IMG/VR virus record: IMGVR_UViG_3300044644_001125
Location: 263,257 to 327,256 of that record
Length of the DNA: 64,000 nucleotides
Reading direction: 5' to 3' (one strand)
This document shows positions 3,655 through 64,000 of this stretch, piece after piece. Numbering within the stretch: position 1 is the stretch's first letter; every line of letters starts with the position of its first letter. Under the pieces are notes generated by a model, which was not told where the DNA came from, searched no databases, and worked only from the letters and a program-made list of their open reading frames with translations. Made by a program: the position numbers and the translations under genes.

Positions 3655-3933
3655 ATGACTGAAGCTGTATTAGAAGCAACAACCGCAACCGTAGAATCTA
3701 CAGAAACTGTTGACACAGCGGCAACAACCGCAGCAGAAGCATCGACACAAGCTGCTGACGCAGCGGCTGCACCTGAATTAACATTAAATGACTTAGCTGT
3801 ATTACGCCAAATCATCGAAGTTGCATCACAACGCGGTGCATTCAAAGCGGCTGAATTAGAAGCAGTTGGTAAAGCATTCAATAAATTATCAGCATTCTTA
3901 GATGCTGCAACTGAATCAGCAGCACAAGGCTAA
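3655..3933 (+). CDS. Hypothetical protein
   Basis: 92-aa ORF with AGAGGA RBS, acidic Ala/Thr-rich N-terminus and helical LTLNDLAVLRQIIEVASQRGAFKAAEL core. Confidence 0.7.
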   Translation: MTEAVLEATTATVESTETVDTAATTAAEASTQAADAAAAPELTLNDLAVLRQIIEVASQRGAFKAAELEAVGKAFNKLSAFLDAATESAAQG

Positions 3934-40808: not shown

Positions 40809-41258
40809 TTATCTCACTTGCACGATATACTCACCTGAACTTGGATCATTTGTTACTACCTTAAATCCATATCGTTTACTTAATTGTCGAGTTAATGATT
40901 GATATACACCACGTCTGTCATTAGTCCCATCATCCTTTGCCGCTGAGTACCCAATGTACATAATCTTTGGGTTTTGTTTAATCCAAACCAATGCACATGC
41001 TATCACGGTTGATAGTATCTTACGAGCAAAACCTTCTGTATTGAATCCATCAAATGAATCATTAATTTCGTATATTAAAGTAGCATAGTTAGATTTATTT
41101 CTGTGAAACAAAACCATACCCGAATGCTTTTCACCAGATGGTGTTTCAAACGCAAACTCAAATATATTTGAATCAGTTTGTTTGTATTCTAGTGGAGTAT
41201 CTAATGCCTCCACTAGATCAATGTTGTCAATTATGTCAAGCAGTTCTCGCATTTGCAT
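40809..41258 (-). CDS. Hypothetical protein, candidate internal head protein
   Basis: 149 aa; N-terminus MRELLDIIDNIDLVEA; TATAAATA on the minus strand at 41411-41418. Confidence 0.6.
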   Translation of the reverse strand: MQMRELLDIIDNIDLVEALDTPLEYKQTDSNIFEFAFETPSGEKHSGMVLFHRNKSNYATLIYEINDSFDGFNTEGFARKILSTVIACALVWIKQNPKIMYIGYSAAKDDGTNDRRGVYQSLTRQLSKRYGFKVVTNDPSSGEYIVQVR

Positions 41259-45331: not shown

Positions 45332-45628
45332 ATGAAATTCGAAATAGCACCTAAATCAACTGAGATAGAATCCAACTGGTTTGATGCAAAACTCTATTGC
45401 TTCTCCCTTAACATAGATGGTAAGACTGGTTGGAGATTACCAACAAGGGCAGAACTAAATGAAATTTATGAATCTGATAATGATTTCGTTATTTGCACCT
45501 ACTACTGGACATCTGCTGAATTTAGCGGCACCGGTGCTTGGACTCAACTATTCATTAATGGGATCCAGAACTTCCGCACGAAGGATTACGACAAAAATCA
45601 GGTTAGAGCAGTAAGGGACTTAGCATGA
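45332..45628 (+). CDS. DUF1566/Lcl-C (C-type lectin fold) protein
   Basis: W.DAK.YC..L..DG..GWRLPT..EL, YWTS, VRAVRD motifs. Confidence 0.8.
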   Translation: MKFEIAPKSTEIESNWFDAKLYCFSLNIDGKTGWRLPTRAELNEIYESDNDFVICTYYWTSAEFSGTGAWTQLFINGIQNFRTKDYDKNQVRAVRDLA

Positions 45629-45921
45629 AATTTGAAATAGCACCGAAAGAAACAGAGACCCAAGCCAATTGGGATGATGCCCGTTTGTATTGCTTTGCTC
45701 TTAATATAGATGAGAAAGTTGGCTGGAGATTACCTACTATTAAAGAGTTAAACTATATAAATCGTGTGATTAATGATCTTTCAACCGAAGATTACTGGTC
45801 ATCAATAGAACGACCAGACAAAAGATACGCAGAATGCTATACCACAATCGATGGTGGTTATACGGTCAATACATTAAAACACGATTTAGGCTATGTTAGC
45901 GCAGTAAGGGACTTAGTATGA
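45625..45921 (+). CDS. DUF1566/Lcl-C protein
   Basis: WDDARLYC, GWRLPTIKEL, YWSS, VSAVRD. Confidence 0.8.
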   Translation: MKFEIAPKETETQANWDDARLYCFALNIDEKVGWRLPTIKELNYINRVINDLSTEDYWSSIERPDKRYAECYTTIDGGYTVNTLKHDLGYVSAVRDLV

Positions 45922-46217
45922 ACTTTGAAATAGCACCCAAAGAATACGAGATACGAGGAAACTGGGATGATTCCAGATTCTATTGCTTTGCTCTTAATAT
46001 AGATGGAAAATCAGATTGGAGATTACCAACTAAAGAAGAACTTAACGAAATCTTCCAATCAGCACATGATTTCGAGGATGGCTCGTATTGGTCTTCTACT
46101 CCTTCCGATGTTGATGAGGTAGGCGTGCGGGTTCAAATATTCGATACTAGTGGATTCGAATACTCCGCAATAAAGTCCAGTCCCTACGGATATACCAGAG
46201 CCGTCAGAACAATCTAA
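45918..46217 (+). CDS. DUF1566/Lcl-C protein
   Basis: WDDSRFYC, DWRLPTKEEL, YWSST, TRAVR. Confidence 0.8.
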   Translation: MNFEIAPKEYEIRGNWDDSRFYCFALNIDGKSDWRLPTKEELNEIFQSAHDFEDGSYWSSTPSDVDEVGVRVQIFDTSGFEYSAIKSSPYGYTRAVRTI

Positions 46218-46292
46218 TCGTTGCGAGCCACAAACCAGTAAAATCCCACCAGATAAATAGGTTCACTACCAACCAAAACAAGTGAACCTACA

Positions 46293-52343: not shown

Positions 52344-55300
52344 ATGGCAAACGAAGTAATTATTAATATTCCCGGTATTGGCGATGTTGTTGCAGAAAAT
52401 GCAGCATCAGAATCAACGTTGCGTAGCATTTTGGCAGCAATGGAGGCTAATGGTCGAGCAGGTGGTGGATCATCGAGTTCTAGCTCAAGTTCTAGTAATT
52501 CAGCAAGATCAGCGAGGGAAAGGGAATCTAATGATATACGTGGAAGAGCCGATAATTCATTCAAACAATTAGTTTCTTCTACTGGCTCATTAATAAATTC
52601 ATTTGCACATCTTGGTGGGAGTGTTACGGCTGCGGCTAATGCAACGAGTAATTTCACTAAACAAATACCATTAGTTGGTGATACATTAGCTGTTGTATTT
52701 AAAAATGTAGCATCCGCCCAGCGTGAACTCATTACTGCATACCAGCAAGCCACCTCGGTTGGTGCTACGTTTGCTGGAAGTATTAACGAATTTTCAGCAT
52801 ATGCTAGTGCAGCAAGTCAAACATTAGATCAATTCTCTTCGTTTATTTCTACTAATGGTAAATCACTTGAATTGCTAGGTGATACCACTGAAGAAGGTGC
52901 AAAACGGTTTAGCGTGTTATCTAAATCACTCAGAGAAACTAGTACTGATTTGTATTCATTGGGATTTTCAACCAAAGATTTGAATAATGGTCTTATCCAA
53001 TATACACAATATCAACAATATTATGGGAATGTTGGAAAACGAACCAATGCCGATTTGATTGCTGGTACTAAAGCCTACATGAAAGAATTGGACATTCTTG
53101 CTAAAATCACAGGCGAATCTAAAGAAAAAGTCGCAAATGATATGGCATCACTTAATATTGATACCGATTTTAGATCGTATATTGATAGCTTAGGTGCTAA
53201 TAGCGAAAAAGCTGGTAAGGAATTGAGTAGTACTCTTGAAACCGTACCAGAAAGCATGCGTAAATTCCTAAAAGATGTTATCACTCACGGGGTACCAACA
53301 TCTGCCGATACTCAAGCTGCTTGGTCTGTATTCGGGCAAATCAGTAACGAAGCAATGCGGTATAAAAAGGCATTGGATTCTGGAACAGCCACCGAGGAAG
53401 ATAGACAACGGTTGTTAAACGCCATAGCTAAAGAATCTGCTGAAAAAAACAAAGGTGCAACTGCTAACTTAGCAATGTGGTCAGATACAAACCTAGGTCT
53501 TGTTAAAAAGATGGCCATGGAAGGCGTTGCATTTGATGCAGATCGTCGCAAGAAAGCTATTGATTCACAGGATAAAACTCTTCAAGCACAAGAAAGCTAT
53601 AACCAAAAATACGAAGCATTTAAAACAAAAATCATTGAAGTCGGTAATAGATTCACAGATGTACTAGCTAGCAGTGGTGCATTCGGATTATTAACCAAAG
53701 TATTTGAGGTATTAACATCAATAATTGATAAAGTCAGTGTACCAATCTTTAAATCATTCAGTACCGTTATTGGTTCAGTCACGAAAGTATTAGAGACTTC
53801 ACTAGGACCAACTTTTAAACTTCTTGATTCTTGGTTAGGTGAGTTACCGACCATCATGACAGCGGTATTCAATACGGTTTTTGGTCCAGACTTGAAGTCA
53901 GTAACCGATAAATTCACGTCATGGTTGAATCCAGCATCAAATGCGCTTGCTGGTTTTACAGAAGATATGTCCAAATTATCACCAGAAGATCAAGCTAAAG
54001 CAGCCGCGAACTGGATATCAGCAAAGATAGAACATATGTTTGAAGATATTCACATGGCCTGGGTGGTTTTACAACAGAAAGTAGTTGAGGTTGCATCAGC
54101 ATTCGTAAGCCCAATCTTGAATACCGGTATATATCTCCAACAATTCTCATTGATTCTCGAAGAACAAGTAGATACTATACGAAAATCGATGAACGTATAT
54201 GATGCAGAATCACTAAGTGCAAATTTAAAACTTGGTATCTTAGGCTTTCAAGTTGGTATCGATAGCGTAATTTCAAAATGGTACGCTGTTGAAACGTGGA
54301 TAGATAAAGTGGCAATGGGTTTATCACACTTTTCTGATATGATGAACTATTTGAAAGTATTAGATCCACGTTCAAAATACTCATCGGAAGATTATGCAGC
54401 AGATAAAGCAAAAAACGATCAGTACCGATATTCACTAAGAAAAGAGATAGACGAAAGAAAACAATTTGATTCTGGTGAAAAGGAAGCACACCTAAAAGCA
54501 TACGAAGCAGAAAAGAAAAACGTTGAGTCATTAGCTGACCAGAAAAAGAATGATCTAGTTAAAGAACTCGATGAAAATGAAACAAATCGCAATGCAAGGA
54601 AAAAACACTTAGCAAAACTCATTGAAGATAATGCAGAAGCAGAGAAAAAATGGAATGATGCGTTAACTGCATATGCCACCAAATTGTCGGAAGATGCTGC
54701 TAATATCGCATCAAAAAGCGAAGAACGCGATAACATCAGAGGCGCAATTGTCAATGAGGAAATGGATAATGCAAAAACTAATGCAGCACTTGCTGATAAA
54801 AATGCAACTACCACGCAATATATCAACGACCAAGTTAAGAAAGGTGGACTAGCTGCTGGTGCAGCGTTAACAGCAAATACCACAGACGAGGCAGCTGGTA
54901 GAATGATTGCTATGGCTGAAACTGGTGGTAGAAGTATACAAAATGCAGCAGGTGGTAAAGCAGCCGGTATGCACCAATGGATGCCAAAAACTTGGGAAAG
55001 CGTAACAGCTTCGATGGGTAAAAAGTGGGATTTGTCTGATAGATTCGACCCAGCAAAATCTACTGAAGCCATGAACTTCATCATAGGCCAGTACAGAAAT
55101 AAAATAGAACCCGGTCTTGGCAGAAGAGCAACCCCTGCAGAATTATACATGCTTCATTTTTTAGGAGCAGGTGGTGGTTCTAAATTCTTACGAGCACTCC
55201 AAGCCAACCCTAATCAAAGTGTACAAGGTGTGGTTGGCACCGACCAGTTTAAACAAAACTTGGGTGTATTTGCACCACATGGAAACGTTCGCTCAGTACA

Positions 55301-55727
55301 GCAAGTATTTGATGAAATGAGTAGTCGGTTAACACGTGGATCAACCACTGCGTCGAATGCTACCGAAAAATCAAAAAATCCCGTATCGATGAGTAATTTT
55401 GCTAATGCCAATATCAAATCTCCTACCAGTAATGGTATTAACCAATCCGCTCTTTCTACGGCTGAAGCAGATAAGAAAGTTAGAGATGACGAGTTTAGAA
55501 AACAGCAGAAAGAAAAAGAACAAGCAGCGTCACGAGACCAACTGCAAAGTCAACAAGAACAACAAACATCAAACAGCCCGATACAAAATGATGTTCATGC
55601 TACTTTCCTTGAAAATATGTCGAATTCATTGATGGATATGAAAAACATTTTAGCAGAATCGCATCAAGTACAACAAAGCCAACTCTCAACTCAACGCGGC
55701 CTATCCGGTAATGGATTTGTGCGTTAA
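52344..55727 (+). CDS. Tape measure protein with lytic transglycosylase-like domain
   Basis: Long helical Ala/Ser/Leu-rich body; C-terminal AETGG...AAGMHQWMPKTW...ELYMLHFLGAGG. Confidence 0.8.
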   Translation: MANEVIINIPGIGDVVAENAASESTLRSILAAMEANGRAGGGSSSSSSSSSNSARSARERESNDIRGRADNSFKQLVSSTGSLINSFAHLGGSVTAAANATSNFTKQIPLVGDTLAVVFKNVASAQRELITAYQQATSVGATFAGSINEFSAYASAASQTLDQFSSFISTNGKSLELLGDTTEEGAKRFSVLSKSLRETSTDLYSLGFSTKDLNNGLIQYTQYQQYYGNVGKRTNADLIAGTKAYMKELDILAKITGESKEKVANDMASLNIDTDFRSYIDSLGANSEKAGKELSSTLETVPESMRKFLKDVITHGVPTSADTQAAWSVFGQISNEAMRYKKALDSGTATEEDRQRLLNAIAKESAEKNKGATANLAMWSDTNLGLVKKMAMEGVAFDADRRKKAIDSQDKTLQAQESYNQKYEAFKTKIIEVGNRFTDVLASSGAFGLLTKVFEVLTSIIDKVSVPIFKSFSTVIGSVTKVLETSLGPTFKLLDSWLGELPTIMTAVFNTVFGPDLKSVTDKFTSWLNPASNALAGFTEDMSKLSPEDQAKAAANWISAKIEHMFEDIHMAWVVLQQKVVEVASAFVSPILNTGIYLQQFSLILEEQVDTIRKSMNVYDAESLSANLKLGILGFQVGIDSVISKWYAVETWIDKVAMGLSHFSDMMNYLKVLDPRSKYSSEDYAADKAKNDQYRYSLRKEIDERKQFDSGEKEAHLKAYEAEKKNVESLADQKKNDLVKELDENETNRNARKKHLAKLIEDNAEAEKKWNDALTAYATKLSEDAANIASKSEERDNIRGAIVNEEMDNAKTNAALADKNATTTQYINDQVKKGGLAAGAALTANTTDEAAGRMIAMAETGGRSIQNAAGGKAAGMHQWMPKTWESVTASMGKKWDLSDRFDPAKSTEAMNFIIGQYRNKIEPGLGRRATPAELYMLHFLGAGGGSKFLRALQANPNQSVQGVVGTDQFKQNLGVFAPHGNVRSVQQVFDEMSSRLTRGSTTASNATEKSKNPVSMSNFANANIKSPTSNGINQSALSTAEADKKVRDDEFRKQQKEKEQAASRDQLQSQQEQQTSNSPIQNDVHATFLENMSNSLMDMKNILAESHQVQQSQLSTQRGLSGNGFVR

Positions 55728-55799
55728 TTGGTAGTAAACTAAAAGATAATTGAATTTAGTTCCGAGTAATGATAAAACGAAATAGATAATATTGGTATA

Positions 55800-55869
55800 G
55801 CGAGCACCGCTAGGTGCGAGCCATAGAAAAACCTAATATAGTATAGCGAGCCGCTATCGCGGCGAGCCA
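55800..55869 (+). repeat. Two copies of the GCGA-stem-loop-GAGCCA element
   Basis: gcga-gcacc-gcta-ggtgc-gagcca (55800) and gcga-gccgc-tatc-gcggc-gagcca (55846). Confidence 0.85.
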
Positions 55870-55929
55870 TTAATGAAAAATCCCAAGACATAAATAGGTT
55901 AAACATTCAACAGAATAGGATTAATCTAA

Positions 55930-58900
55930 ATGTCTTGGAAAAAACACTTCAAACCAGTTACTATCGACGGTCACGGTTCTCATAGCCCAATCAGCGGCGG
56001 TGGAAGACCAGGCCCTGCTAAAACTAACTACTCTAGCTTCCTACCAGATGTCTACGCTGGTACACCAAACCGCATCGATAGATACATGCAATATGATACC
56101 ATGGACATGGACTCTGAAGTCAATGCCGCTCTCGATATCATCGCAGAATTCTGTACGCAAAAAGATAAAGAAAATGAAACACCTTTTCATACCTCCTTCC
56201 GTGGACAACCTACCTCCACCGAAGTTAAACTCATTAAAGACTGCTTGCAGAAATGGTGCAAACAACAACAATTCGAAACTCGTATCTTTAGAATCGTCAG
56301 AAATACCTTCAAGTACGGTGACTGCTTCTTCCTAAGAGACCCCGAAACTAAGAAATGGTTGTACGTTGACCCAGTCAAAGTTAGTAAAATTATCGCAAAC
56401 GAATCAGAGGGCAAAATCCCTGAACAATACGTTATCAAAGATATTAACTTTAACTTTAAAAACTTAATCGCCGTAACTCCTCATGGTATCACCAATACCT
56501 CACCCAGCGGTACTGCCAGTTATACTTCAGGTGGCAGCCTAGCTAGAGGTATGGTAGGCGATACAGCTAGAGCTACCGGTACCAGATTCCAAAATGCAAT
56601 CAATGAAATCGCAGTCGATGCCAAAGACGTTGTTCATATCAGCCTCAGTGAAGGTCTTGATAATAACTTCCCATTTGGTAATAGCTTACTCGAATCTGTT
56701 TTCAAAGTCTATAAACAAAAAGAATTGCTCGAAGATGCGGTTATTATCTACAGAATTCAGAGAGCACCAGAGCGTTTGGTGTTTTATGTTGACGTAGGTA
56801 ACATGCCAGCACATTTGGCAATGGGCTTTGTTGAAAGAGTTAAGAATGAGATTCAACAAAGACGTATACCAAGCTCAACAGGCGGTGCATCTGGTAGTAC
56901 AGTCGATTCAAGTTACAATCCACTTTCAGTAGGTGAAAACTTTTATTTGCCTTCCACAAGTGAGGGACGTGGCTCTAGGGTTGAAACATTGCCAGGTGGC
57001 TGTTTCGCAATGGATACTAAAGTATCGTTATTAGATGGTCGTGAACTATCTATCCGTGATATCGAAACTGAACTAAAAGATGGTAAAACCTTATGGACTT
57101 ACTCATGTGAACCAATAACAGGTAAAGTCTTACCCGGATTAATCACATGGGCTGGTGTTACACATAAGTCTGCTAAAGTTATGAAAATAACTTTAGATAA
57201 CGGTGAAACTATTACATGTACACCTGATCACAAGTTCCCAGTATACGAACAAGAGTTTAAACGTGCTGACGAGTTTAAAGTTGGTGATAGTCTGATTCCT
57301 CTTTATAGAAAAACTGAGAAAGTATCAGCAAAAGCCAACGATTACGAACAGTATTTTGATAATGCCGATAAAACTTGGAAATTCACACACAGAACTGTTG
57401 CTGATTATCTAAAAGATGATGTAGTAAAATTCGAAGTATACAAAGAAGAGTACACAAGCGGATTGTATGAAGTTCGTCATCACAAAAACTTCAATCGGTT
57501 CGATAATTCACCAGAAAACCTGTGCTTTATGGGTTGGAGAGACCATATTAGGTTTCATGGCGAAAATTTTGCAAGTACCTTGGAATATCTAAAAGAAAAT
57601 GAACCTGAGTTATACCAAGCACGCTGTGATGCGATAAGCCTCGGTCATACTAAACGATGGGAAGGGCTAGCAGATGAAGATAGAGCCGCTGTTGGTATTA
57701 AATCAGCAGAAGCATGGGCTAGATGTACACCGGAAGAATATGACAGCTGGTGTGAAAGTATTAGTGAGGGGTTGCTAGAGTATTGTGCAAACTTAACACC
57801 TGAAGAAAAAGAAATTCGCGATGCCAATTCGCGTGCTGCTTTTATCATCGGAAACCAGAAGTTCAATGAAAAGATGCAGAATGATCCAGTATTTTATGCG
57901 ATGGTTGTTGGTAAACGAATGACATATTGGACACCAGAGAAGCGTGAATGGCGTGCAGAACAAACACGTGCGAATGGCTTAGTTTTCCGTGAAACTGAAT
58001 CATACAAAGAAAATACCAAAAAATCGGCAGATTCTCAACGTATGAAATATTCACACAAAATGCTGAAATATGTTATAAACTTGGTTAAAGGTAAAACCAC
58101 ATATCAAGTTGGATTAACCGATGTTGTAAACGCATTGAACAATGATCAAGAAATGCTTGATGAATTGTACGAGCTGAATAAAGAAAACACCACGCCAAAT
58201 TGGAAAGTCTCCGACGGCTACACTGAATCGAATGTTAAAACCATGGTTAAACATTTTGGATATGAAAAATGGTCTGATTTCCGTAGAAAAGAAAGCATAC
58301 ACAATCATACAATCACAGCCATTGAATACTTGGATGATGAGATTGAGGTTGGTACGTTGACCATTGATAATGACGAAAAATACCATAATTATCATACATT
58401 TGCGTTGAGTTGTGGGGTATTTGTGTTCAATAGTCAGACAGGTGAAATAACGGATTTGCGCTACTTCACCAATAAGTTGTTTAGAGCTCTCCGTATACCA
58501 GCAAGTTACTTACCAACTGGTATTGAAGAAGCCTCGAATACCGTAGCGGATGGAAAAGTGGGAACTGCGTATATCCAAGAGTTTAGATTTAATGAGTATT
58601 GTAAACGACTACAGAACTTATTGGTACAGACGTTTGATTTGGAGTTTAAACTTTGGTTATATTCGCAAGGTATCAACATTGATAGTAGTTTATTTGAACT
58701 GAAGTTTAATGAGCCGCAGAACTTTGCAGCGTATAGACAAAGTGAGTTAGATACGACTCGAGTGAATATCTTTGCGCAGTTGCAAGAGATACCATATTTG
58801 AGTAAACGCTTTGCAATGAAGCGATTCTTGGGTATGACACAAGAGGAGATCACAGAGAATGAAGCCATGTGGCGTGAAGAGAACGGCCATAAGTTAGAAT

Positions 58901-59100
58901 CATTGGTAGATGGTGCTGGAGAGTTACGTTCTGCTGGGATTTCGCCAAGTGGAATTGCATCTGATATGAGTTCACAAGACGAGCAGGCACCTGAAGGCGT
59001 AGGTCAAGGACCAGACGGTGAGGCTGGTGGTATTGGTTCTGCTCCAGGTCCAATGGGTAATGCGGCACCTGGACCGACTGGTGGCCCAATGGGTATGTAA
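55930..59100 (+). CDS. Portal vertex protein (T4 gp20-like) containing an intein
   Basis: MDMDSEVNAALDIIAE, LLEDAVIIYRIQRAPERLVFYVDVGNMP, DLRYFTNKLFRALRIPASYL. Confidence 0.92.
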   Translation: MSWKKHFKPVTIDGHGSHSPISGGGRPGPAKTNYSSFLPDVYAGTPNRIDRYMQYDTMDMDSEVNAALDIIAEFCTQKDKENETPFHTSFRGQPTSTEVKLIKDCLQKWCKQQQFETRIFRIVRNTFKYGDCFFLRDPETKKWLYVDPVKVSKIIANESEGKIPEQYVIKDINFNFKNLIAVTPHGITNTSPSGTASYTSGGSLARGMVGDTARATGTRFQNAINEIAVDAKDVVHISLSEGLDNNFPFGNSLLESVFKVYKQKELLEDAVIIYRIQRAPERLVFYVDVGNMPAHLAMGFVERVKNEIQQRRIPSSTGGASGSTVDSSYNPLSVGENFYLPSTSEGRGSRVETLPGGCFAMDTKVSLLDGRELSIRDIETELKDGKTLWTYSCEPITGKVLPGLITWAGVTHKSAKVMKITLDNGETITCTPDHKFPVYEQEFKRADEFKVGDSLIPLYRKTEKVSAKANDYEQYFDNADKTWKFTHRTVADYLKDDVVKFEVYKEEYTSGLYEVRHHKNFNRFDNSPENLCFMGWRDHIRFHGENFASTLEYLKENEPELYQARCDAISLGHTKRWEGLADEDRAAVGIKSAEAWARCTPEEYDSWCESISEGLLEYCANLTPEEKEIRDANSRAAFIIGNQKFNEKMQNDPVFYAMVVGKRMTYWTPEKREWRAEQTRANGLVFRETESYKENTKKSADSQRMKYSHKMLKYVINLVKGKTTYQVGLTDVVNALNNDQEMLDELYELNKENTTPNWKVSDGYTESNVKTMVKHFGYEKWSDFRRKESIHNHTITAIEYLDDEIEVGTLTIDNDEKYHNYHTFALSCGVFVFNSQTGEITDLRYFTNKLFRALRIPASYLPTGIEEASNTVADGKVGTAYIQEFRFNEYCKRLQNLLVQTFDLEFKLWLYSQGINIDSSLFELKFNEPQNFAAYRQSELDTTRVNIFAQLQEIPYLSKRFAMKRFLGMTQEEITENEAMWREENGHKLESLVDGAGELRSAGISPSGIASDMSSQDEQAPEGVGQGPDGEAGGIGSAPGPMGNAAPGPTGGPMGM
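57001..58431 (+). mobile_element. 477-aa intein with an HNH-type endonuclease insert
   Basis: Starts GG|CFAMDTKV, has block B TCTPDHKF, ends FALSCGVFVFN|S; internal RHHKNFNRFDNSPENL...H...H. Confidence 0.88.
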
Positions 59101-59128
59101 GCGTAGTATAAATAAGTTTGAATGTTTT

Positions 59129-59176
59129 GCCCCTGTTTTCCTAGTAATGTTTATTAGGATTGCAGGGGTTTTTTAT
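59129..59176 (+). terminator. Intrinsic terminator after portal
   Basis: cccctg...cctagtaa/ttattagg...cagggg followed by T6. Confidence 0.6.
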
Positions 59177-59188
59177 TGGTTGGGTATA

Positions 59189-59212
59189 TGGCTCGGCGTT
59201 AACACGCCTCGC
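59189..59212 (-). repeat. GCGA-stem-loop-GAGCCA element (minus strand)
   Basis: Reverse complement reads gcga-ggcgt-gtta-acgcc-gagcca. Confidence 0.8.
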
Positions 59213-59246
59213 AAGATAAGATTGAAATTATCTTTTAGAAAACTAC

Positions 59247-59276
59247 TTGACATCTATTATCTTTTAGTATTAGTAT
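59247..59276 (+). promoter_or_regulatory. Sigma70-like promoter with 12-mer site in the spacer
   Basis: TTGACA-18 nt-TAGTAT; ATTATCTTTTAG at 59256-59267 and 59227-59238. Confidence 0.55.
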
Positions 59277-59317
59277 GGGTCAATAAATACAGCAACTAGA
59301 CAACGGCAGGTATAACT

Positions 59318-60466
59318 ATGAGAATAAGTGAATTGATAGAAGCAAGGAAAAATCCAGATAAGAATCCAAAAATATCAGTATGGGACTATGTGAATGCTGA
59401 ATTACCAAAAGCGGATGAAATCGCAGATGTTAGTAATATGTTTGTTAGTTTCACCACTATCGATAAGTTGGGTATCAACCCAAACTCAACATATAATACA
59501 CCACTAGGTATATACGCATATCCAGGCGATTATGTGCAATACAAAGCACGTTACAATACAAATGATTTACCGTTTGCTGGCGGTAGCGAATATGCTAATG
59601 TATTCAAAGTAACTGGTAATATCGTCAACCTAAGTGAACTATCATCGGCTGACGAATTGAAGTATCACCAACAACTCAGCGAAGTATATGCAACTGCAGT
59701 GAAACCCCTTGGTGTGTCATGGAAAACTGCAGTGGATACTGTATACGAGTTGATAATTGAATCGGACAACGAAGCAAGGGTAAAATCACCGGGTGGAAAA
59801 CTGTGGTATATAATGATGAAACTTACAACACTACCGACAAGATCGGTGACATATGCTTGGAATACCAAACCACATATTGCTTGGAATTCACTTTTTCGTC
59901 GAATTGGTATCGATGGTTGTATTGATAACGGGGATTCGATTATTCACCCAGTAGAACCAACTCAAGCCGTATTTTTTTCAAAAACCGTAATCAAAAACAA
60001 CGTTAGATTACTCAATAAGTGGACAACTGCATCGATTAATATGGGAACTGCTAGAGGTATGTCGGCCCAGTATGCAATTGGTAAACTAGCAAATATGACC
60101 GATCAAGAACTCGAAGACTACGTGAAATCTGTTACACATGGTATCAAGTATGTTAAACAACCAACTGAAGAACTACAATTGGCTGCGGTTGGTAGTAATG
60201 CCCGTGCTATCGAGTATATTAAAAATCCAACTGAAAAAGTGCAAATGATGGCTATTAACACTGCTCCTTTTAATATAAAATACATCACAAACCCAAGTGA
60301 AGCCATCCAATTGGCAGCTGTTGCCAAAGCAGCAATATCAATACAGCATATTGACAATCCAACCGAAAAGGTTCAAATATTAGCGATTAAGCAAGAGGGT
60401 AATGTTATGATTGACTATATCAAAAACCCACACCCGAATGTGGTAAAACTAGTTGGAAAAATCTGA
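59318..60466 (+). CDS. Hypothetical protein with C-terminal ~22-aa helical repeats (DUF4116-like)
   Basis: Repeats (A)IxYIxNP(T/S)ExxQxxA(V/I) x4-5; N-terminus MRISELIEA. Confidence 0.7.
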   Translation: MRISELIEARKNPDKNPKISVWDYVNAELPKADEIADVSNMFVSFTTIDKLGINPNSTYNTPLGIYAYPGDYVQYKARYNTNDLPFAGGSEYANVFKVTGNIVNLSELSSADELKYHQQLSEVYATAVKPLGVSWKTAVDTVYELIIESDNEARVKSPGGKLWYIMMKLTTLPTRSVTYAWNTKPHIAWNSLFRRIGIDGCIDNGDSIIHPVEPTQAVFFSKTVIKNNVRLLNKWTTASINMGTARGMSAQYAIGKLANMTDQELEDYVKSVTHGIKYVKQPTEELQLAAVGSNARAIEYIKNPTEKVQMMAINTAPFNIKYITNPSEAIQLAAVAKAAISIQHIDNPTEKVQILAIKQEGNVMIDYIKNPHPNVVKLVGKI

Positions 60467-60476
60467 GTTAACATAC

Positions 60477-60500
60477 AAGGGCTATCCATGTAGCCCTTTT
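60477..60500 (+). terminator. Intrinsic terminator
   Basis: aagggcta-tccatg-tagccctt plus T tract. Confidence 0.75.
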
Positions 60501-60546
60501 CTTTACTAAAAGATAATTAACCTATCTATTGCGAAACGTAAAACAC

Positions 60547-60574
60547 TTGACATCCTCTAATATCCCGCTATAAT
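60547..60574 (+). promoter_or_regulatory. Sigma70-like promoter for the second accessory array
   Basis: TTGACA-16 nt-TATAAT; CTAAAAGATAAT upstream at 60506. Confidence 0.7.
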
Positions 60575-60596
60575 ATCCCTAACTTAATCAACCGGA

Positions 60597-60908
60597 GTGA
60601 AACAAATGGCAGAATTCACAATCAAGTTTAGACCCGAGGATTTCATGCCACCGAGAGGGATGAAGAATCGACCACGCTCGCAATCGTTATGGTCTAAGGA
60701 TTATGGGATGTGCACCTACATCAAACCACACGAAGCATTTAATCATACTCTGTATAGAAAGTTGTTCTATCTAGGCAATTTCGCACCGTTGCCAGTCCAA
60801 CGCAAGTGGGAGCCAGTGTATAATAAATTCATGAGTAGACATGCTCCGTATTTTGTGCGATCGGTTTACAAACGCTGGGGTCGAAAATACACTGGGAAGT
60901 TCTTCTAA
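60597..60908 (+). CDS. Hypothetical protein; paralog of the left-edge ORF
   Basis: APLPVQxKW and TIxFRP motifs shared with 3..329. Start may be the ATG at 60606. Confidence 0.7.
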   Translation: MKQMAEFTIKFRPEDFMPPRGMKNRPRSQSLWSKDYGMCTYIKPHEAFNHTLYRKLFYLGNFAPLPVQRKWEPVYNKFMSRHAPYFVRSVYKRWGRKYTGKFF

Positions 60909-60941
60909 AAGATAATTGAATCGCAGTTCAACCATAATCTT

Positions 60942-60965
60942 GCGAGCACCGCTAGGTGCGAGCCA
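60942..60965 (+). repeat. GCGA-stem-loop-GAGCCA element
   Basis: gcgagcaccgctaggtgcgagcca followed by ATAGGAAACCAA and ATG. Confidence 0.85.
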
Positions 60966-60977
60966 ATAGGAAACCAA

Positions 60978-61286
60978 ATGAAATTCGAAATAGCACCTAA
61001 ATCGACAGAGATCCAAACCAACTGGGAAGATGCCAGACTCTACTGCTTCTCTCTTAATATAGACGGTAAAACCGGATGGCGATTACCAAGTGTTTATGAA
61101 TTAGAATCGTTTACCAGATCAACCAATATGGAAAATGCTCTGTATTGGACTGGTACATCATACAAGAGTTACCCAAATGGCGCTACTTCGATTCATTTTG
61201 GTAAAAACAGTTGCTCCGTCCATTTCTTTACCAAAGAATCTTCGTTGTGGGTTAGAGCAGTGAGAGATCTAAAAGATGATCTTTGA
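60978..61286 (+). CDS. DUF1566/Lcl-C protein
   Basis: WEDARLYC, GWRLPS..EL, YWTG, VRAVRDLKDD. Confidence 0.8.
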   Translation: MKFEIAPKSTEIQTNWEDARLYCFSLNIDGKTGWRLPSVYELESFTRSTNMENALYWTGTSYKSYPNGATSIHFGKNSCSVHFFTKESSLWVRAVRDLKDDL

Positions 61287-61566
61287 AATAGCACCCAAAT
61301 CAACAGAGATCCAAGCCAGCTGGTATGAAGCTAGAATGTATTGCTTCTCCCTTAATATCGATGGTAAGATCGGATGGAGATTACCAACTAAAGAAGAATT
61401 GAATGAGATATACCTTTCAGAAAATGATTTTGAAAAACGTTGGTATTGGTCCTCTACTGAGTACCTTGGCAACGGCGCCTGGGTTCAGTATTTCGGCGAT
61501 GGCGACCAGGGCAACTTCGGTAAGAGCAGCGGCGGCTTCTACGTTAGAGCCATTAGATCAATATAA
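61276..61566 (+). CDS. DUF1566/Lcl-C protein with a DGR-like variable region
   Basis: GWRLPTKEEL, WYWSSTE; 61465-61539 is 47/75 GC with 16 of 25 codons ending in C. Confidence 0.82.
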   Translation: MIFEIAPKSTEIQASWYEARMYCFSLNIDGKIGWRLPTKEELNEIYLSENDFEKRWYWSSTEYLGNGAWVQYFGDGDQGNFGKSSGGFYVRAIRSI

Positions 61567-61571
61567 TAGAA

Positions 61572-61595
61572 GCGAGCACCGCTAGGTGCGAGCCA
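61572..61595 (+). repeat. GCGA-stem-loop-GAGCCA element
   Basis: Exact copy 5 nt after the stop of 61276..61566. Confidence 0.85.
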
Positions 61596-61609
61596 ATAGG
61601 AAAACAACA

Positions 61610-61933
61610 ATGATTGAAATAGCACCCAAAGAATACGAAATTAGTATAGGTTACCAAGAAGCAAGGATGTATTGCTTTTCACTTAACATTGATGGTAAAA
61701 TAGGTTGGAGATTACCTACAATTGAAGAGTTGGAAAACATCTATACCTGTGTGAATGATTTTATGAAAAACGGGTGGTATTGGTCATCGACTGAAGTTGA
61801 AAACGGAGTTTGGTTTAAATCATTTAGTCGATACCCGAAACACGGACCAACTGGATGGAAAGATATCATCTATTTTGACGAATTTCATACAAATGTAAAC
61901 TCCTGTTTAGTCAGACCAGTGAGAGACCTATGA
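61610..61933 (+). CDS. DUF1566/Lcl-C protein
   Basis: MIEIAPKE start after AGGA; GWRLPTIEEL, YWSSTE, VRPVRD. Confidence 0.8.
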   Translation: MIEIAPKEYEISIGYQEARMYCFSLNIDGKIGWRLPTIEELENIYTCVNDFMKNGWYWSSTEVENGVWFKSFSRYPKHGPTGWKDIIYFDEFHTNVNSCLVRPVRDL

Positions 61934-62271
61934 CTTATTTTTCAACAAAACTTTACCCGCCAACTCCACGATTACCATGTCAACTGTCGGATTCTATGTA
62001 TTGGAAGAAAATGTCTTGGGAAGAAGCCAAGATGTATTGCTTTTCTCTTAATGACAGGGGTATAATTGGATGGAGATTACCTACGTTATTTGAGTTGAAC
62101 AGTATTATATTACGAGTATCCTCACCACTAGACCATGAATTTGAGATTTGGTCAGAAGAAAATGGACAGGACATTGCTTGGTTTATGTCTAGTCGGAATA
62201 GTCAGAGATTGGCAAGCAAGTATATGGATGATATTTACTGTATCCCAGTTCGAGATCTAAAAGACGATTAA
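61930..62271 (+). CDS. DUF1566/Lcl-C protein (divergent)
   Basis: SWEEAKMYC, GWRLPTLFEL, CIPVRDLKDD. Confidence 0.75.
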   Translation: MTYFSTKLYPPTPRLPCQLSDSMYWKKMSWEEAKMYCFSLNDRGIIGWRLPTLFELNSIILRVSSPLDHEFEIWSEENGQDIAWFMSSRNSQRLASKYMDDIYCIPVRDLKDD

Positions 62272-62291
62272 TACCACTGAGAAAAACCAAA

Positions 62292-62588
62292 ATGAACTTT
62301 GAAATAGCACCAAAATCAACCGAAATACTATCCACATGGAATGATGCCCGTTTGTATTGTTTCTCTCTTATTATTGATGATAAAACTGGATGGAGATTAC
62401 CCACTAAAGATGAATTAAACGAAATATACGAATCAGAAAATGATTTTGAAAAACGTTGGTATTGGTCTTCTACTGAGTATAATGGCAACAGCGGCATCTT
62501 GGGTCAGAATATGAATGGTGGCATCCAGGGCTACGGTGGCGGTAAGAACTACGCCGTCGCCTACGTTAGAGCCATCAGATCAATATAA
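62292..62588 (+). CDS. DUF1566/Lcl-C protein with a DGR-like variable region
   Basis: Constant flanks nearly identical to 61276..61566; 62481-62561 is rich in NNC/NNT codons. Confidence 0.82.
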   Translation: MNFEIAPKSTEILSTWNDARLYCFSLIIDDKTGWRLPTKDELNEIYESENDFEKRWYWSSTEYNGNSGILGQNMNGGIQGYGGGKNYAVAYVRAIRSI

Positions 62589-62592
62589 TATC

Positions 62593-62616
62593 GCGAGCAC
62601 CGCTAGGTGCGAGCCA
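62593..62616 (+). repeat. GCGA-stem-loop-GAGCCA element
   Basis: Exact copy 4 nt after the stop of 62292..62588. Confidence 0.85.
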
Positions 62617-62630
62617 ATAAGGAAAACCAA

Positions 62631-63026
62631 ATGACAGAAGACCAATTCCTGCAATCCCTAAAACTAAAGCCTAAGCCAATTGAACCAATCGAGGTTTACG
62701 AGTCTTTGAATATAGAAATTGCACCCAGTCATTACTGTAGGCAACTGACTTGGGCGGATGCAAAACTTTACGCGTTTGCTTTAAACATAGAAGGTAAGAT
62801 CGGATGGAGATTACCGTGTGACGAAGAAATGGGTTGCTTACTTGAAAATCATCCAAGATTTAACGGTTTCTGGTATATGCAATACTGGTGTGATGTAATC
62901 AAATCCGGCCGTATAACATCTAAAGAGTATACTGCGTGGTTGGAACCCACTGGTCTACATTTCCAAACTCGTAATGGCGAATATGTACATAATACTGTCT
63001 TTGTCCGAGATCTAAAAGATGATTGA
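62631..63026 (+). CDS. DUF1566/Lcl-C protein (divergent)
   Basis: ATG after AAGGA; IEIAPS...TWADAKLY, GWRLP..EE, FVRDLKDD. Confidence 0.75.
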   Translation: MTEDQFLQSLKLKPKPIEPIEVYESLNIEIAPSHYCRQLTWADAKLYAFALNIEGKIGWRLPCDEEMGCLLENHPRFNGFWYMQYWCDVIKSGRITSKEYTAWLEPTGLHFQTRNGEYVHNTVFVRDLKDD

Positions 63027-63294
63027 GATATCACCTAAATCATTCGAAAAGCGTCTAACCCACGACGATGCTAAATTTTACGTATTCTCACTAGGTAATG
63101 GTTGGCGATTCCCAACAGTTGAGGAATTGCGAATGATACATGGTTCTGATAATGATTTGGAAAACGAGTTACATTTTACTAATTCCGATACGTTAGTTTC
63201 TTTTAGTTATCGGCGTTTCATCAAATGTTTCGAACGGAATGAATGCGAAGATGATTGTTTTATCAGACCAGTCAGAGATCTAAAAGATGATTAA
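63019..63294 (+). CDS. DUF1566/Lcl-C protein (divergent, short)
   Basis: MIEISPK, GWRFPTVEEL, IRPVRDLKDD. Confidence 0.7.
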   Translation: MIEISPKSFEKRLTHDDAKFYVFSLGNGWRFPTVEELRMIHGSDNDLENELHFTNSDTLVSFSYRRFIKCFERNECEDDCFIRPVRDLKDD

Positions 63295-63302
63295 ATCACC
63301 AT

Positions 63303-63324
63303 AGGCTACTCAGGTAGCCTTTTT
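63303..63324 (+). terminator. Intrinsic terminator closing the DUF1566 array
   Basis: aggctac-tcag-gtagcct plus TTTT. Confidence 0.75.
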
Positions 63325-63375
63325 AATATCTAAAATTCACCATAACATTTCACTATAATACTCCACCATATTATT

Positions 63376-63399
63376 GCGAGTGCCGCTAGGCACGAGCCA
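63376..63399 (+). repeat. GCGA-stem-loop-GAGCCA element (covariant stem)
   Basis: gcga-gtgcc-gcta-ggcac-gagcca. Confidence 0.85.
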
Positions 63400-63470
63400 T
63401 ATCAAAATCAACTGTTTCAAAAGCCTAAATACCGGTAATACTGCCAAATTACGGAAGGCTAAATACAACC

Positions 63471-63710
63471 ATGAAACTACTTGAATTCTTTTATTTTAAC
63501 GACAATTCCGATGGAATGTCTAATGATCGTCGATATGATGCGACACGGGATAGCTCTGTTCTTACGAAATCAGATACCCGTAAGATTAAATTGACTTTAA
63601 GACAAATTAACCAATTGAGATTATCAACCGAAGCCCATGAAGCTGAAAAGCAAGCAGAAGCAGGGTTTATTTCTCAAATGTATTCCAAACCAGTAGATGC
63701 CCAACAATAG
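63471..63710 (+). CDS. Hypothetical late protein
   Basis: 79 aa; two CTAAATA motifs upstream; starts MKLLEFF. Confidence 0.65.
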   Translation: MKLLEFFYFNDNSDGMSNDRRYDATRDSSVLTKSDTRKIKLTLRQINQLRLSTEAHEAEKQAEAGFISQMYSKPVDAQQ

Positions 63711-64000
63711 TCCCGCTTTCGTCTTAGGGAATGGTCGTAGTCGCTTGGCTATTGATTGCTCTCAATTAACAACAAATGGAACTGTTTACGGATGTAATGC
63801 AGTTTATAGGGAATTTGACCCAGACTACTTGATTGCAGTCGATACCAAAATGGTCAATGAAATTGTCTCAACCGGATACCAAGAAACCCACCAAGTTTGG
63901 ACTAATCCCAATAGAGGGATTCATACTAAAAAGAATCTTAACTTCTTTAGTCCACACAAAGGATGGAGCTCAGGTCCAACTGCTCTTTGGTTTGCCGCGT
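63697..64000 (+). CDS. 3'-truncated protein with MptE/DUF115-like glycosyltransferase-related fold
   Basis: Hand translation MPNNSPAFVLGNGRSR...YGCNAVYREFDPDYLIAVD...; runs off the window. Confidence 0.6.
   Translation, partial: MPNNSPAFVLGNGRSRLAIDCSQLTTNGTVYGCNAVYREFDPDYLIAVDTKMVNEIVSTGYQETHQVWTNPNRGIHTKKNLNFFSPHKGWSSGPTALWFAA

What the first reader, a model, noticed from the sequence alone, without database searches (positions are those of the whole stretch)
55800..63399. Dispersed 24-nt hairpin with covarying stem and invariant tandem G.A mismatches
Seen: seven full copies (55800, 55846, 59189 on minus, 60942, 61572, 62593, 63376) of GCGA-[5-bp stem]-[4-nt loop]-GAGCCA. Four different stems all pair perfectly (gcacc/ggtgc, gccgc/gcggc, gtgcc/ggcac, ggcgt/acgcc), so structure rather than sequence is conserved. 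The invariant flanks fold as G-C, C-G, G.A, A.G stacked on the stem. This sheared tandem GA context exists on one strand only, implying recognition as ssDNA or RNA. Loops are mostly GNTA. A collapsed copy (GCGAGCCA at 46223) follows the third DUF1566 gene of the first array. Three copies are followed by AATA(G/A)GGAAA and a start codon, like cassette junctions. Inference: a phage-specific recognition element, such as a DGR target hairpin, an attC/REP-like cassette recombination site, or a translational or RNA-processing operator. I do not recognise it as a named element.
Basis: partly seen in the sequence, partly recalled or inferred. Interest (0 to 1): 0.75.

Follow-up and report, generated by a model that had tools for sequence, protein, structure and literature searches.

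The report
Dispersed structured hairpin repeat in phage
A freshwater jumbo phage carries about 50 copies of a 26-base hairpin between its genes; its shape is conserved while its stem sequence varies, and two window copies sit where a diversity-generating retroelement needs a hairpin.

Summary
All seven window copies exist (0.01 expected by chance). The whole 327-kb phage genome holds 48 paired copies, essentially all intergenic.

The consensus is T-Y-GCGAG-NNCC-GNTA-GGNN-CGAGC-C-W. It folds as 2 bp, a tandem G.A/A.G, 5 bp and a tetraloop. Covariation is very strong: 100% of cells pair, and all five inner pairs show changes on both sides.

The family is confined to a clade of lake jumbo phages. 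Copies lie in both orientations relative to transcription. They occur singly, in tandem and as inverted pairs, at gene-cassette boundaries. This distribution resembles REP elements.

The phage has 73 DUF1566 paralogs, and about 13 end in genuine DGR variable repeats. I predicted the cognate template repeat and found it, with Avd and RT, in sister strains. This genome has no RT.

Window copies 61572 and 62593 lie 20 and 19 nt after two such repeats. In strain comparisons, repeats followed closely by the hairpin are hypervariable, and repeats without it are static.

So the DGR-hairpin reading is supported for copies next to a variable repeat. Most copies have no such neighbour, and their function remains inferred. 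No HUH transposase, integrase or T7-type phage RNA polymerase was found, and nothing matches in Rfam.

The parts
55800..55823 (+). Hairpin copy (stem GCACC/GGTGC, loop GCTA). It lies between the end of a 1127-aa ORF and the late-promoter-like CATAAATA upstream of the portal gene.
55846..55869 (+). Chimeric copy. The flanks are in + orientation, but the inner stem-loop is inverted (loop TATC is the reverse complement of GATA).
59189..59212 (-). Copy antisense to both neighbouring + genes (stem GGCGT/ACGCC, loop GTTA). It lies between the portal terminator and the TTGACA promoter of the next gene. A relative (L014) carries a different hairpin at this site.
60942..60965 (+). Copy between a 103-aa gene and the ribosome-binding site of the first DUF1566 gene of the array.
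61572..61595 (+). Copy 20 nt downstream of the end of VR1 and 5 nt after the stop codon. This is the position of a DGR target hairpin. The ribosome-binding site of the next gene follows.
62593..62616 (+). Copy 19 nt downstream of the end of VR2 and 4 nt after the stop codon. This is the position of a DGR target hairpin.
63376..63399 (+). Copy (stem GTGCC/GGCAC) after the terminator that closes the DUF1566 array. The orthologous copy in L020 and L035 has GAGCC/GGCTC, a compensatory double change.
46223..46230 (+). Collapsed copy GCGAGCCA after the third DUF1566 gene of the first array. It is a deletion between the two GCGAG direct repeats.
60529..60534 (+). Remnant TTGCGA of a hairpin. The copy is intact at the orthologous site in L009 and L014 (stem GCCGC, loop GTTA).
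61447..61551 (+). VR1, the DGR variable repeat at the 3' end of DUF1566 gene 61276-61566. Against the cognate TR, 24 of 43 A sites and 0 of 62 non-A sites are changed. It is hypervariable between strains and within a lake metagenome.
62463..62573 (+). VR2, the variable repeat of DUF1566 gene 62292-62588. Differences between strains are concentrated here.

Best explanation
The element is a lineage-specific, REP-like family of 26-nt structured intergenic repeats.

**Shown.** One strand folds into a compact hairpin: G-C, C-G, tandem G.A/A.G, a 5-bp stem closed by C-G, and a GNTA loop. Selection keeps the fold and the asymmetric flanks and loop, while the middle of the stem drifts by compensatory change.

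**Inferred.** The element works at the DNA level. The hairpin extrudes from AT-rich intergenic DNA, or forms on transiently single-stranded DNA. A trans-acting factor, not yet identified, reads it strand-specifically, independent of the direction of transcription.

**Role next to a variable repeat.** Where a copy lies about 20-35 nt downstream of a DUF1566 variable repeat, in sense orientation, it supplies the hairpin/cruciform that DGR retrohoming needs. This makes that repeat an efficient target of an Avd-TR-RT cassette. Sister strains of the same phage carry that cassette, and this strain does not.

**Role elsewhere.** The other copies mark cassette boundaries in the hyperplastic regions. 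As short dispersed repeats they also favour gain, loss and rearrangement of small genes.
For: **Structure and selection.**
- The fold is the minimum-energy structure.
- On 20 distinct sequences, 100% of cells pair and there are 11 further pair types.
- There are 14 distinct stems among 119 instances.
- Compensatory double changes occur at orthologous sites: 326632 GTGCC to GAGCC, and 226366 GCACC to GAGCC.
- The flanks are tightly coupled to the hairpin: 43 of 58 hairpins of this type carry them.

**DNA level rather than RNA level.**
- Among copies between co-directional genes, 23 are sense and 11 antisense.
- Antisense copies sit between stop or terminator and the next promoter, and one sits inside a 5' UTR.
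- Antisense copies are conserved in relatives with 90-98% identical flanks.

**Distribution.**
- Essentially all 48 copies are intergenic.
- They are clustered in regions of small genes, with tandem and inverted pairs.

**DGR role.**
- 12 copies directly follow a DUF1566 gene in sense orientation, against 1 in antisense.
- The cognate TR-Avd-RT was found on sister-strain contigs that carry the same hairpin family.
- VR1 shows 24 of 43 A sites changed and 0 of 62 non-A sites.
- Within one strain pair (G000 against L054), only the repeat with a hairpin 14 nt after its stop is hypervariable. Two repeats without a hairpin, and one with a hairpin 50 nt away, differ by 1-4 ordinary substitutions.
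- VR1 and VR2, both with hairpins, are hypervariable against L015, L016 and L020.
- A lake metagenome holds contigs that replace exactly 61461-61536.
- The same hairpin sits at both variable-repeat ends of an archaeal DGR and nowhere else in that 700-kb genome.
- Known requirements match: a hairpin 4-34 bp after the variable repeat, where stem structure matters and sequence does not, and where the loop is orientation-specific (PMC3240598).

**Cassette boundaries.**
- L014 has an extra promoter-gene-terminator cassette bounded by two copies.
- L016 lacks the interval between copies 324198 and 324828.
Against: - No binding protein or nuclease has been identified.
- There is no direct evidence that the hairpin forms in DNA in vivo. 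A 5-bp core stem is short for cruciform extrusion.
- At least 36 of 48 copies have no variable repeat beside them.
- The cis target of the cognate DGR uses an ordinary GC-rich terminator hairpin about 42 nt away, not this element.
- A 372-kb relative has a variable repeat with a clean DGR signature but only a degenerate antisense relic of the hairpin.
- The loop is GNTA, not the GRNA consensus reported for DGRs.
- The link between hairpin and hypervariability rests on six variable repeats.
- Orientation still leans 2:1 towards sense, and the sense RNA is more stable. An RNA role is therefore not excluded.
- The enrichment of indel breakpoints near hairpins was measured on loci fetched around hairpins, so it is biased.
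Confidence: 0.45

Rival explanations
1. RNA-level element. Transcribed within polycistronic early mRNAs, the stable hairpin protects 3' or 5' ends from exonucleases. Alternatively, it is the site of a phage RNA-binding protein or endonuclease that punctuates or regulates the downstream cistron.
For: - As RNA the sense strand folds at -12.6 kcal/mol, against -10.2 for the antisense strand.
- 34 of 48 copies point the same way as the downstream gene.
- About a dozen copies end 5-10 nt before a Shine-Dalgarno sequence and a start codon.
- Several copies lie a few nt downstream of a -10 element, so they would form the 5' end of the transcript.
- G.U-compatible T.G pairs occur in two stem variants.
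- One 151-nt metatranscriptome contig reads through copy 62593.
Against: - About a third of informative copies are antisense, yet they keep the strand-specific GA/GNTA features and are conserved in relatives.
- Several copies lie between a terminator and the next promoter, where little RNA is expected.
- No U-tract follows the hairpin.
- There is no Rfam match.
- The RNA data are too thin to show ends.
Confidence: 0.25
2. A selfish REP/MITE-like mobile repeat with no function for the phage. An enzyme supplied in trans copies it into intergenic DNA, for example a host HUH/RAYT-type transposase. The conserved flanks and loop are that enzyme's recognition features.
For: - A few master variants dominate. 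GCACC/GCTA accounts for 39 of 119 instances.
- Copies occur in both orientations, and in tandem and inverted pairs.
- Presence or absence varies between close relatives, for example at genome 23497-23599 and 323772.
- The family is absent from a 372-kb relative.
- TnpB-only IS elements are demonstrably mobile in this phage population, which implies a transposase source in trans.
- An unrelated multicopy repeat in Nocardioides shares the same core hairpin.
Against: - No Y1/HUH transposase or tyrosine recombinase is present in the phage.
- There are no target-site duplications and no defined insertion footprint. The clearest polymorphism is an internal deletion, not an insertion.
- Orthologous copies are stably inherited and show compensatory changes.
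- The 12:1 sense bias after DUF1566 genes suggests function there.
- The TnpB IS ends do not resemble the hairpin.
Confidence: 0.15
3. A hairpin promoter for a phage RNA polymerase (N4 virion-polymerase type), or a factor-dependent transcription terminator.
For: - A small hairpin with a stable loop, and conserved bases just 3' of it (C-C/T-A/T), could mark an initiation site.
- Many copies precede genes.
Against: - No T7-like RNA polymerase was found, although the control for that search did not ring.
- The giant ORFs are adhesin- or fibre-like, not polymerases.
- The genes show ordinary sigma-70-type promoters and T4-type late-promoter-like sequences, and true intrinsic terminators lie beside the hairpins.
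- Fourteen copies point away from the downstream gene.
- No U-tract follows the hairpin.
Confidence: 0.04

Closest known systems
DGR target hairpin/cruciform downstream of the variable repeat (Bordetella phage BPP-1; Guo et al. 2011, PMC3240598)
   Same: - A short GC-rich hairpin with a 4-nt loop beginning with G and ending with A.
- It lies on the sense strand, 4-34 bp after the variable repeat. Here the distances are 19-20 nt for two window copies.
- Stem structure is conserved while stem sequence is not. The loop is constrained and orientation-specific.
   Different: - The loop is GNTA, not GRNA.
- The stem has 5 Watson-Crick pairs plus an invariant tandem G.A and 2 outer pairs, instead of 7-10 Watson-Crick pairs.
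- The element is present about 48 times, mostly away from any variable repeat.
- The DGR core is not in this genome.
- The cis target of the cognate DGR uses an ordinary terminator hairpin.
REP/BIME elements of enterobacteria and pseudomonads (from my own knowledge)
   Same: - Extragenic and short (about 25-35 nt).
- Imperfect palindromes at a density near one per 7 kb.
- Found in both orientations, in tandem and inverted clusters.
- The family is lineage-specific.
   Different: - Found in a virus, not a bacterial chromosome.
- No GTAG head and no RAYT transposase.
- The hairpin is much smaller, with an invariant tandem G.A and a tetraloop.
PeSL (promoter-early stem-loop) cassettes of T4-type phages (Arbiol, Comeau and Krisch 2010; from my own knowledge, paper not read here)
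   Same: - Repeated regulatory modules that flank small non-essential genes in hyperplastic regions of T4-type genomes.
- Proposed to mediate modular shuffling. This phage has a T4-type portal and repeated promoter cassettes.
   Different: - PeSL stem-loops are terminators coupled to a promoter in a fixed order.
- This hairpin has no U-tract, has no fixed partner, and occurs in both orientations.
Integron attC sites (from my own knowledge)
   Same: - Cassette-boundary elements.
- Recognised as a folded single strand.
- Structure is conserved rather than sequence, with strand-specific non-paired bases.
   Different: - attC sites are 57-141 nt long with R/L boxes and extrahelical bases.
- They need an IntI tyrosine recombinase, and none is present here.

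Membership tests
DGR target hairpin/cruciform | Lies a few to about 34 bp downstream of a variable repeat that differs from a template repeat only at adenines. | tested here: met
   This holds for copies next to a variable repeat only. Copy 61572 lies 20 nt after VR1, which has 24 of 43 A sites and 0 of 62 non-A sites changed against the TR of L213. Copy 62593 lies 19 nt after VR2. At least 36 of 48 genome copies have no variable repeat beside them.
DGR target hairpin/cruciform | GC-rich stem of 7-10 bp with a 4-nt loop of consensus GRNA on the sense strand. | tested here: not met
   The stem has 5 Watson-Crick pairs, a tandem G.A and 2 further Watson-Crick pairs. The loop is GNTA, with T invariant at the third position. 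The consensus is quoted from PMC3240598.
DGR target hairpin/cruciform | RT, accessory protein and TR are present in the same genome. | tested here: not met
   This genome has no RVT_1 match, no tblastn hit, no YxDD motif, no Avd and no TR-like sequence. The cognate Avd-TR-RT lies on sister-strain contigs L206, L213 and L273-L278.
DGR target hairpin/cruciform | The hairpin is required for efficient retrohoming. | tested here: inconclusive
   Three variable repeats with an adjacent hairpin are hypervariable between strains. Three without one, or with one 50 nt away, are static. The sample is small, and a direct assay is not possible with these tools.
REP/BIME | Extragenic, multicopy, imperfect palindrome, in both orientations and in clusters. 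| tested here: met
   There are 48 copies, essentially all intergenic, in + and - orientation, with tandem triplets and inverted pairs.
REP/BIME | Associated RAYT (Y1 HUH) transposase and a conserved GTAG head. | tested here: not met
   PF01797 is absent from the genome. No GTAG is present, and the conserved head is T-Y-GCGA. The host genome is unknown.
Integron attC | Tyrosine recombinase IntI, with R''-L''/L'-R' boxes and extrahelical bases. | tested here: not met
   PF00589 is absent, and the control rang in 14 of 14 genomes. The 22-nt architecture has no such boxes.
IS200/IS605 end hairpins (TnpB elements) | The hairpin sits at the ends of the IS beside tnpB. | tested here: not met
   Four TnpB ORFs are present. 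The IS ends, defined by an insertion polymorphism in L039, carry a different hairpin, and none of the 48 copies adjoins an IS.
Known RNA families (Rfam 15) | A match at or near the gathering score. | tested here: not met
   The only hit is a chance miRNA-like match at E = 0.34 in 55000-64000.

The most novel reading that the evidence does not exclude
The hairpin may be a portable licensing tag for targeted hypermutation. In this reading, any DUF1566 variable repeat followed closely by a sense copy becomes a substrate of a DGR. That DGR is encoded not in this genome but in co-infecting sister strains. A population of jumbo phages would then share one retroelement in trans, and gain or loss of a 26-nt hairpin would switch individual paralogs between 'diversifying' and 'frozen'. 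The many other copies would be a reservoir of such tags and of recombination points that move cassettes.
Probability: 0.25. Interest if true: 0.85.

Novelty: new variant of a known kind. Interest (0 to 1): 0.62.

Why it matters
If the inference holds, the same small structured repeat is both a general feature of intergenic DNA in a jumbo phage lineage and the cis signal that decides which of about 13 variable repeats a DGR diversifies. That would give a natural multi-target DGR system with on and off targets. The system could be tested with a defined 26-nt element.

It would also be an example of a DGR-less genome whose genes carry a clean signature of a template repeat held by sister strains, through trans action, recombination or recent loss.

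Independently of the DGR link, a REP-like family in a virus is unusual. It has perfect covariation and an invariant tandem G.A platform. It offers a compact model for strand-specific recognition of a folded nucleic acid.

Tried and rejected
- **Rfam scan of 55000-64000:** nothing relevant.
- **Enzymes searched in the genome:** HUH transposase, tyrosine recombinase, T7-like RNA polymerase, RT, Avd and RT-16 RNA are all absent. The controls for PF00940 and RF03019 did not ring, so those two negatives are weak.
- **Giant ORFs as a possible polymerase:** they are adhesin-like.
- **TnpB IS ends as the source of the hairpin:** their sequences are unlike it.
- **Metatranscriptome reads:** two runs hold only a few short contigs, so transcript ends cannot be called.
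- **Metagenome 'loose ends' at hairpins:** these are branch points in the assembly graph at a repeat, not evidence of recombination.
- **Indel breakpoints near hairpins:** 7 of about 19 lie within 40 nt of a copy. The loci were fetched around hairpins, so I do not rely on this.
- **Host REP hypothesis:** It returned mostly chance matches in high-GC genomes, plus unrelated families in Nocardioides, Alphaproteobacteria and haloarchaea. No low-GC host candidate appeared.
- **General DGR association of the motif:**
  - 0 of 400 other genomes of the Woesearchaeota MAG's phylum carry it.
  - None of the 59 IMG/VR RT loci carries a credible copy; the few pattern matches are chance look-alikes without the GNTA loop.
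  - The motif is therefore specific to this lineage and is not a general feature of DGRs.
- **First guess at the TR in IMG/VR:** it gave only a chance hit.
- **Gene conversion among paralogs as the source of variation:** not needed once the TR was found.

Full report
**1. Where the window lies**

- The window is the last 64 kb of a 327,256-bp IMG/VR virus record with 38% G+C.
- The ends of the record overlap by about 175 nt, and related contigs bridge end to start. The record is therefore effectively a complete genome.
- The portal protein (55930-59100) belongs to the T4 gp20 family and carries an intein.
- The nearest cultured relatives are jumbo myoviruses at about 47% amino-acid identity: Yersinia fHe-Yen9-04, Serratia BF, Erwinia and Sinorhizobium phages.
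- Near-identical DNA is found in lake-water metagenomes.

**2. The observation**

- GCGA-N14-GAGCCA occurs at exactly the seven stated positions. Chance predicts 0.01.
- The genome holds 48 copies of GCGA-N14-GAGC with a paired stem, plus four near-copies.
- A position-by-position count gives T-Y-GCGAG-NNCC-GNTA-GGNN-CGAGC-C/T-A/T. Nothing is conserved beyond -2 and +25, so the element is self-contained.
- The predicted minimum-energy fold is 2 bp, a 2x2 G.A/A.G loop, 5 bp and a tetraloop. This holds for both RNA and DNA.
- The flanks belong to the hairpin. Only 58 hairpins with a 5-bp stem, a C-G closing pair and a G.TA loop exist in the genome, and 43 carry the full flanks.

**3. Covariation**

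- The genome and related contigs give 119 instances, with 25 distinct 22-mers and 14 distinct stems.
- 114 of 115 stem cells pair, against 73 +/- 3.7 after column shuffling.
- The formal count used 20 distinct sequences:
  - 100% of cells are paired.
  - All five inner pairs show changes on both sides.
  - The covariation score is 0.682, against 0.144 +/- 0.03 in shuffles (0 of 500 reach it).
  - Slid controls reach at most 0.08.
- Compensatory double changes also occur at orthologous sites between strains.
- Fold formation on one strand is therefore under selection.

**4. Distribution**

- The family is shared by metagenomic contigs that align to this genome at 73-98% identity.
- It is absent from a complete 372-kb relative, apart from one degenerate relic.
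- Copies are essentially all intergenic. They are concentrated at 92-163 kb, 224-261 kb and 319-327 kb, which are regions of small genes.
- They occur singly, in tandem, for example three copies at 131.4-131.6 kb, and as inverted pairs.
- Among copies between co-directional genes, 23 are sense and 11 antisense.
- I checked the antisense cases by eye.
  - One (32528) is in fact sense to a small gene.
  - The rest are genuine. They lie between a stop or terminator and the next promoter, and one lies inside a 5' UTR.
  - They are conserved in relatives.
- This pattern argues against an obligatory role in sense RNA.
- Loss occurs by internal deletion. TTGCGA at 60529-60534 corresponds to a full copy in L014. 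The collapsed GCGAGCCA at 46223 arises from slippage between the two GCGAG repeats.
- Copy 55846 has its inner stem-loop inverted within normal flanks.

**5. The DGR connection**

- The genome encodes 73 DUF1566 (Lcl_C) paralogs among about 485 ORFs.
- About 13 of them, each about 97 aa long, end in a GC-rich block of about 80 nt. Its NNC/NNT codon pattern ends in TACGTTAGAGCC.
- The genome contains no RT, Avd or TR. The 372-kb relative has no RT either.
- I predicted the template by setting every variable site to A and scanned metagenome contigs.
  - Two freshwater contigs carry exactly that TR, followed by an RT. An Avd-like gene and a cis DUF1566 target precede it.
  - An exact look-up of the Avd protein placed the cassette on a 271,688-bp scaffold.
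  - It also placed it on a contig whose flank is 93% identical to this genome at 19.6-20.7 kb.
  - DGR-plus and DGR-minus strains of one lineage therefore coexist.
- Window VR1 differs from the TR at 24 of 43 A sites and 0 of 62 other sites. Pooled over all variable repeats, 43% of A sites and 11% of other sites differ.

**6. Hairpin and variable-repeat activity**

- Twelve copies directly follow a DUF1566 gene in sense orientation, against one in antisense.
- Copies 61572 and 62593 lie 20 and 19 nt past the ends of VR1 and VR2.
- In the G000 and L054 strain pair, only the repeat of gene 240057, with a hairpin 14 nt after its stop, is hypervariable in the DGR pattern.
  - Genes 239444 and 239737 have no hairpin, and gene 238020 has one 50 nt away.
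  - These three differ by 1-4 ordinary substitutions.
- VR1 and VR2 are hypervariable against L015, L016 and L020, while the rest of each gene is nearly identical.
- A lake metagenome contains contigs that replace exactly 61461-61536.
- This fits the known requirement for a hairpin 4-34 bp after the variable repeat, with structure-dependent stems and an orientation-specific loop (PMC3240598).
- The identical motif also sits at both variable-repeat ends of a Woesearchaeota DGR and nowhere else in that genome.
- Several results limit this reading:
  - The cis target beside the cognate RT uses an ordinary terminator hairpin.
  - Other DGR loci lack the motif.
  - Most copies have no variable repeat nearby.
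  - The DGR-bearing contigs themselves carry one to seven copies each in unrelated intergenic positions.

**7. Conclusion**

- The element is a lineage-specific, REP-like structured repeat.
- Its fold and its asymmetric features are under selection, so a factor probably reads it on one strand. Orientation independence favours DNA over RNA.
- Copies next to a variable repeat most likely act as the DGR target hairpin.
- The function of the remaining copies is inferred, not shown. They may be cassette boundaries, recombination substrates or selfish spread.
- No candidate enzyme was found in the phage.

Noticed in passing
whole genome; window examples 55739-55750, 59227-59238(-), 59256-59267(-), 60506-60517, 60905-60916: The 12-mer CTAAAAGATAAT (up to 1 mismatch) occurs 249 times in the genome. 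The window holds 34 copies, against 0.89 expected. It is found on both strands, inside genes and between them. It often appears as CTAAAAGATAAT-N2-TTGACA-N17-(-10), or supplies the -10 hexamer itself (GATAAT), or encodes the DLKDN/D C-terminus of DUF1566 genes. Its function is unknown.
   Followed up: partly
whole genome; window arrays 45332-46217 and 60978-63294: There are 73 DUF1566 (Lcl_C) paralogs among about 485 ORFs. They are mostly 70-130 aa long and lie in tandem arrays with overlapping stop and start codons.
   Followed up: partly
window 61447-61551 and 62463-62573; L206, L213, L273-L278: DGR variable repeats lie in a genome that has no RT, Avd or TR. The cognate Avd-TR-RT island lies in sister strains. 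One contig's flank is 93% identical to G000:19622-20690, and the cassette also occurs on a 272-kb scaffold. This implies trans action, recombination between strains, or recent loss.
   Followed up: yes
L206:74-1216: The RT on this contig has one in-frame TGA (..DPW*LDL..). The RT is intact (371-379 aa) on the contigs found by exact look-up.
   Followed up: partly
G000:137.6k, 172.7k, 183.5k, 253.9k; L039:7664-9174: Four TnpB-like ORFs of about 430 aa match PF07282. A 1.5-kb TnpB element is inserted after CAATG in relative L039, where this genome has none (position 41164). No TnpA is present in the phage.
   Followed up: partly
window 55930-59100: The T4-type portal gene is interrupted by an intein (Intein_splicing, residues 366-822).
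   Followed up: no
window 16962-30551 (-): A 4529-aa ORF carries FG-GAP and CBM_5_12 matches. It lies in a 35-kb block of very large minus-strand genes, which are probably fibre or adhesin proteins.
   Followed up: no
L192:2000-2500 and about 45 other loci of Nocardioides and related Actinomycetota: A multicopy repeat, in places in 75-nt tandem arrays, has a long hairpin whose core is GCGAG-GGCC-GCTA-GGCC-CGAGC. The outer stem carries a second tandem G.A. The core is the same as in the phage element, but the flanks are unrelated.
   Followed up: partly
L156:1363-1384 and 3890-3911: A Woesearchaeota MAG has a two-target DGR with an RT-16 RNA and an RT. The identical hairpin motif sits at both variable-repeat ends, with the TAG stop codon in the loop. 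It occurs nowhere else in that genome and was not found in 400 other genomes of the phylum.
   Followed up: yes
G000:75-93 kb (outside the window): Early promoters come as near-identical cassettes: the 12-mer box, TTGACA, a -10 element, and a conserved leader ..GTACCCACCTTAACAAAG.. that runs to a GGAG ribosome-binding site. These resemble the PeSL-type repeated regulatory modules of T4-type phages.
   Followed up: no
L214, L215 against G000:177-191 kb: Relatives carry a second, different DGR at the position where this genome has 742-aa and 248-aa ORFs followed by a TnpB element. Its RT is about 60% identical to the cognate RT.
   Followed up: partly
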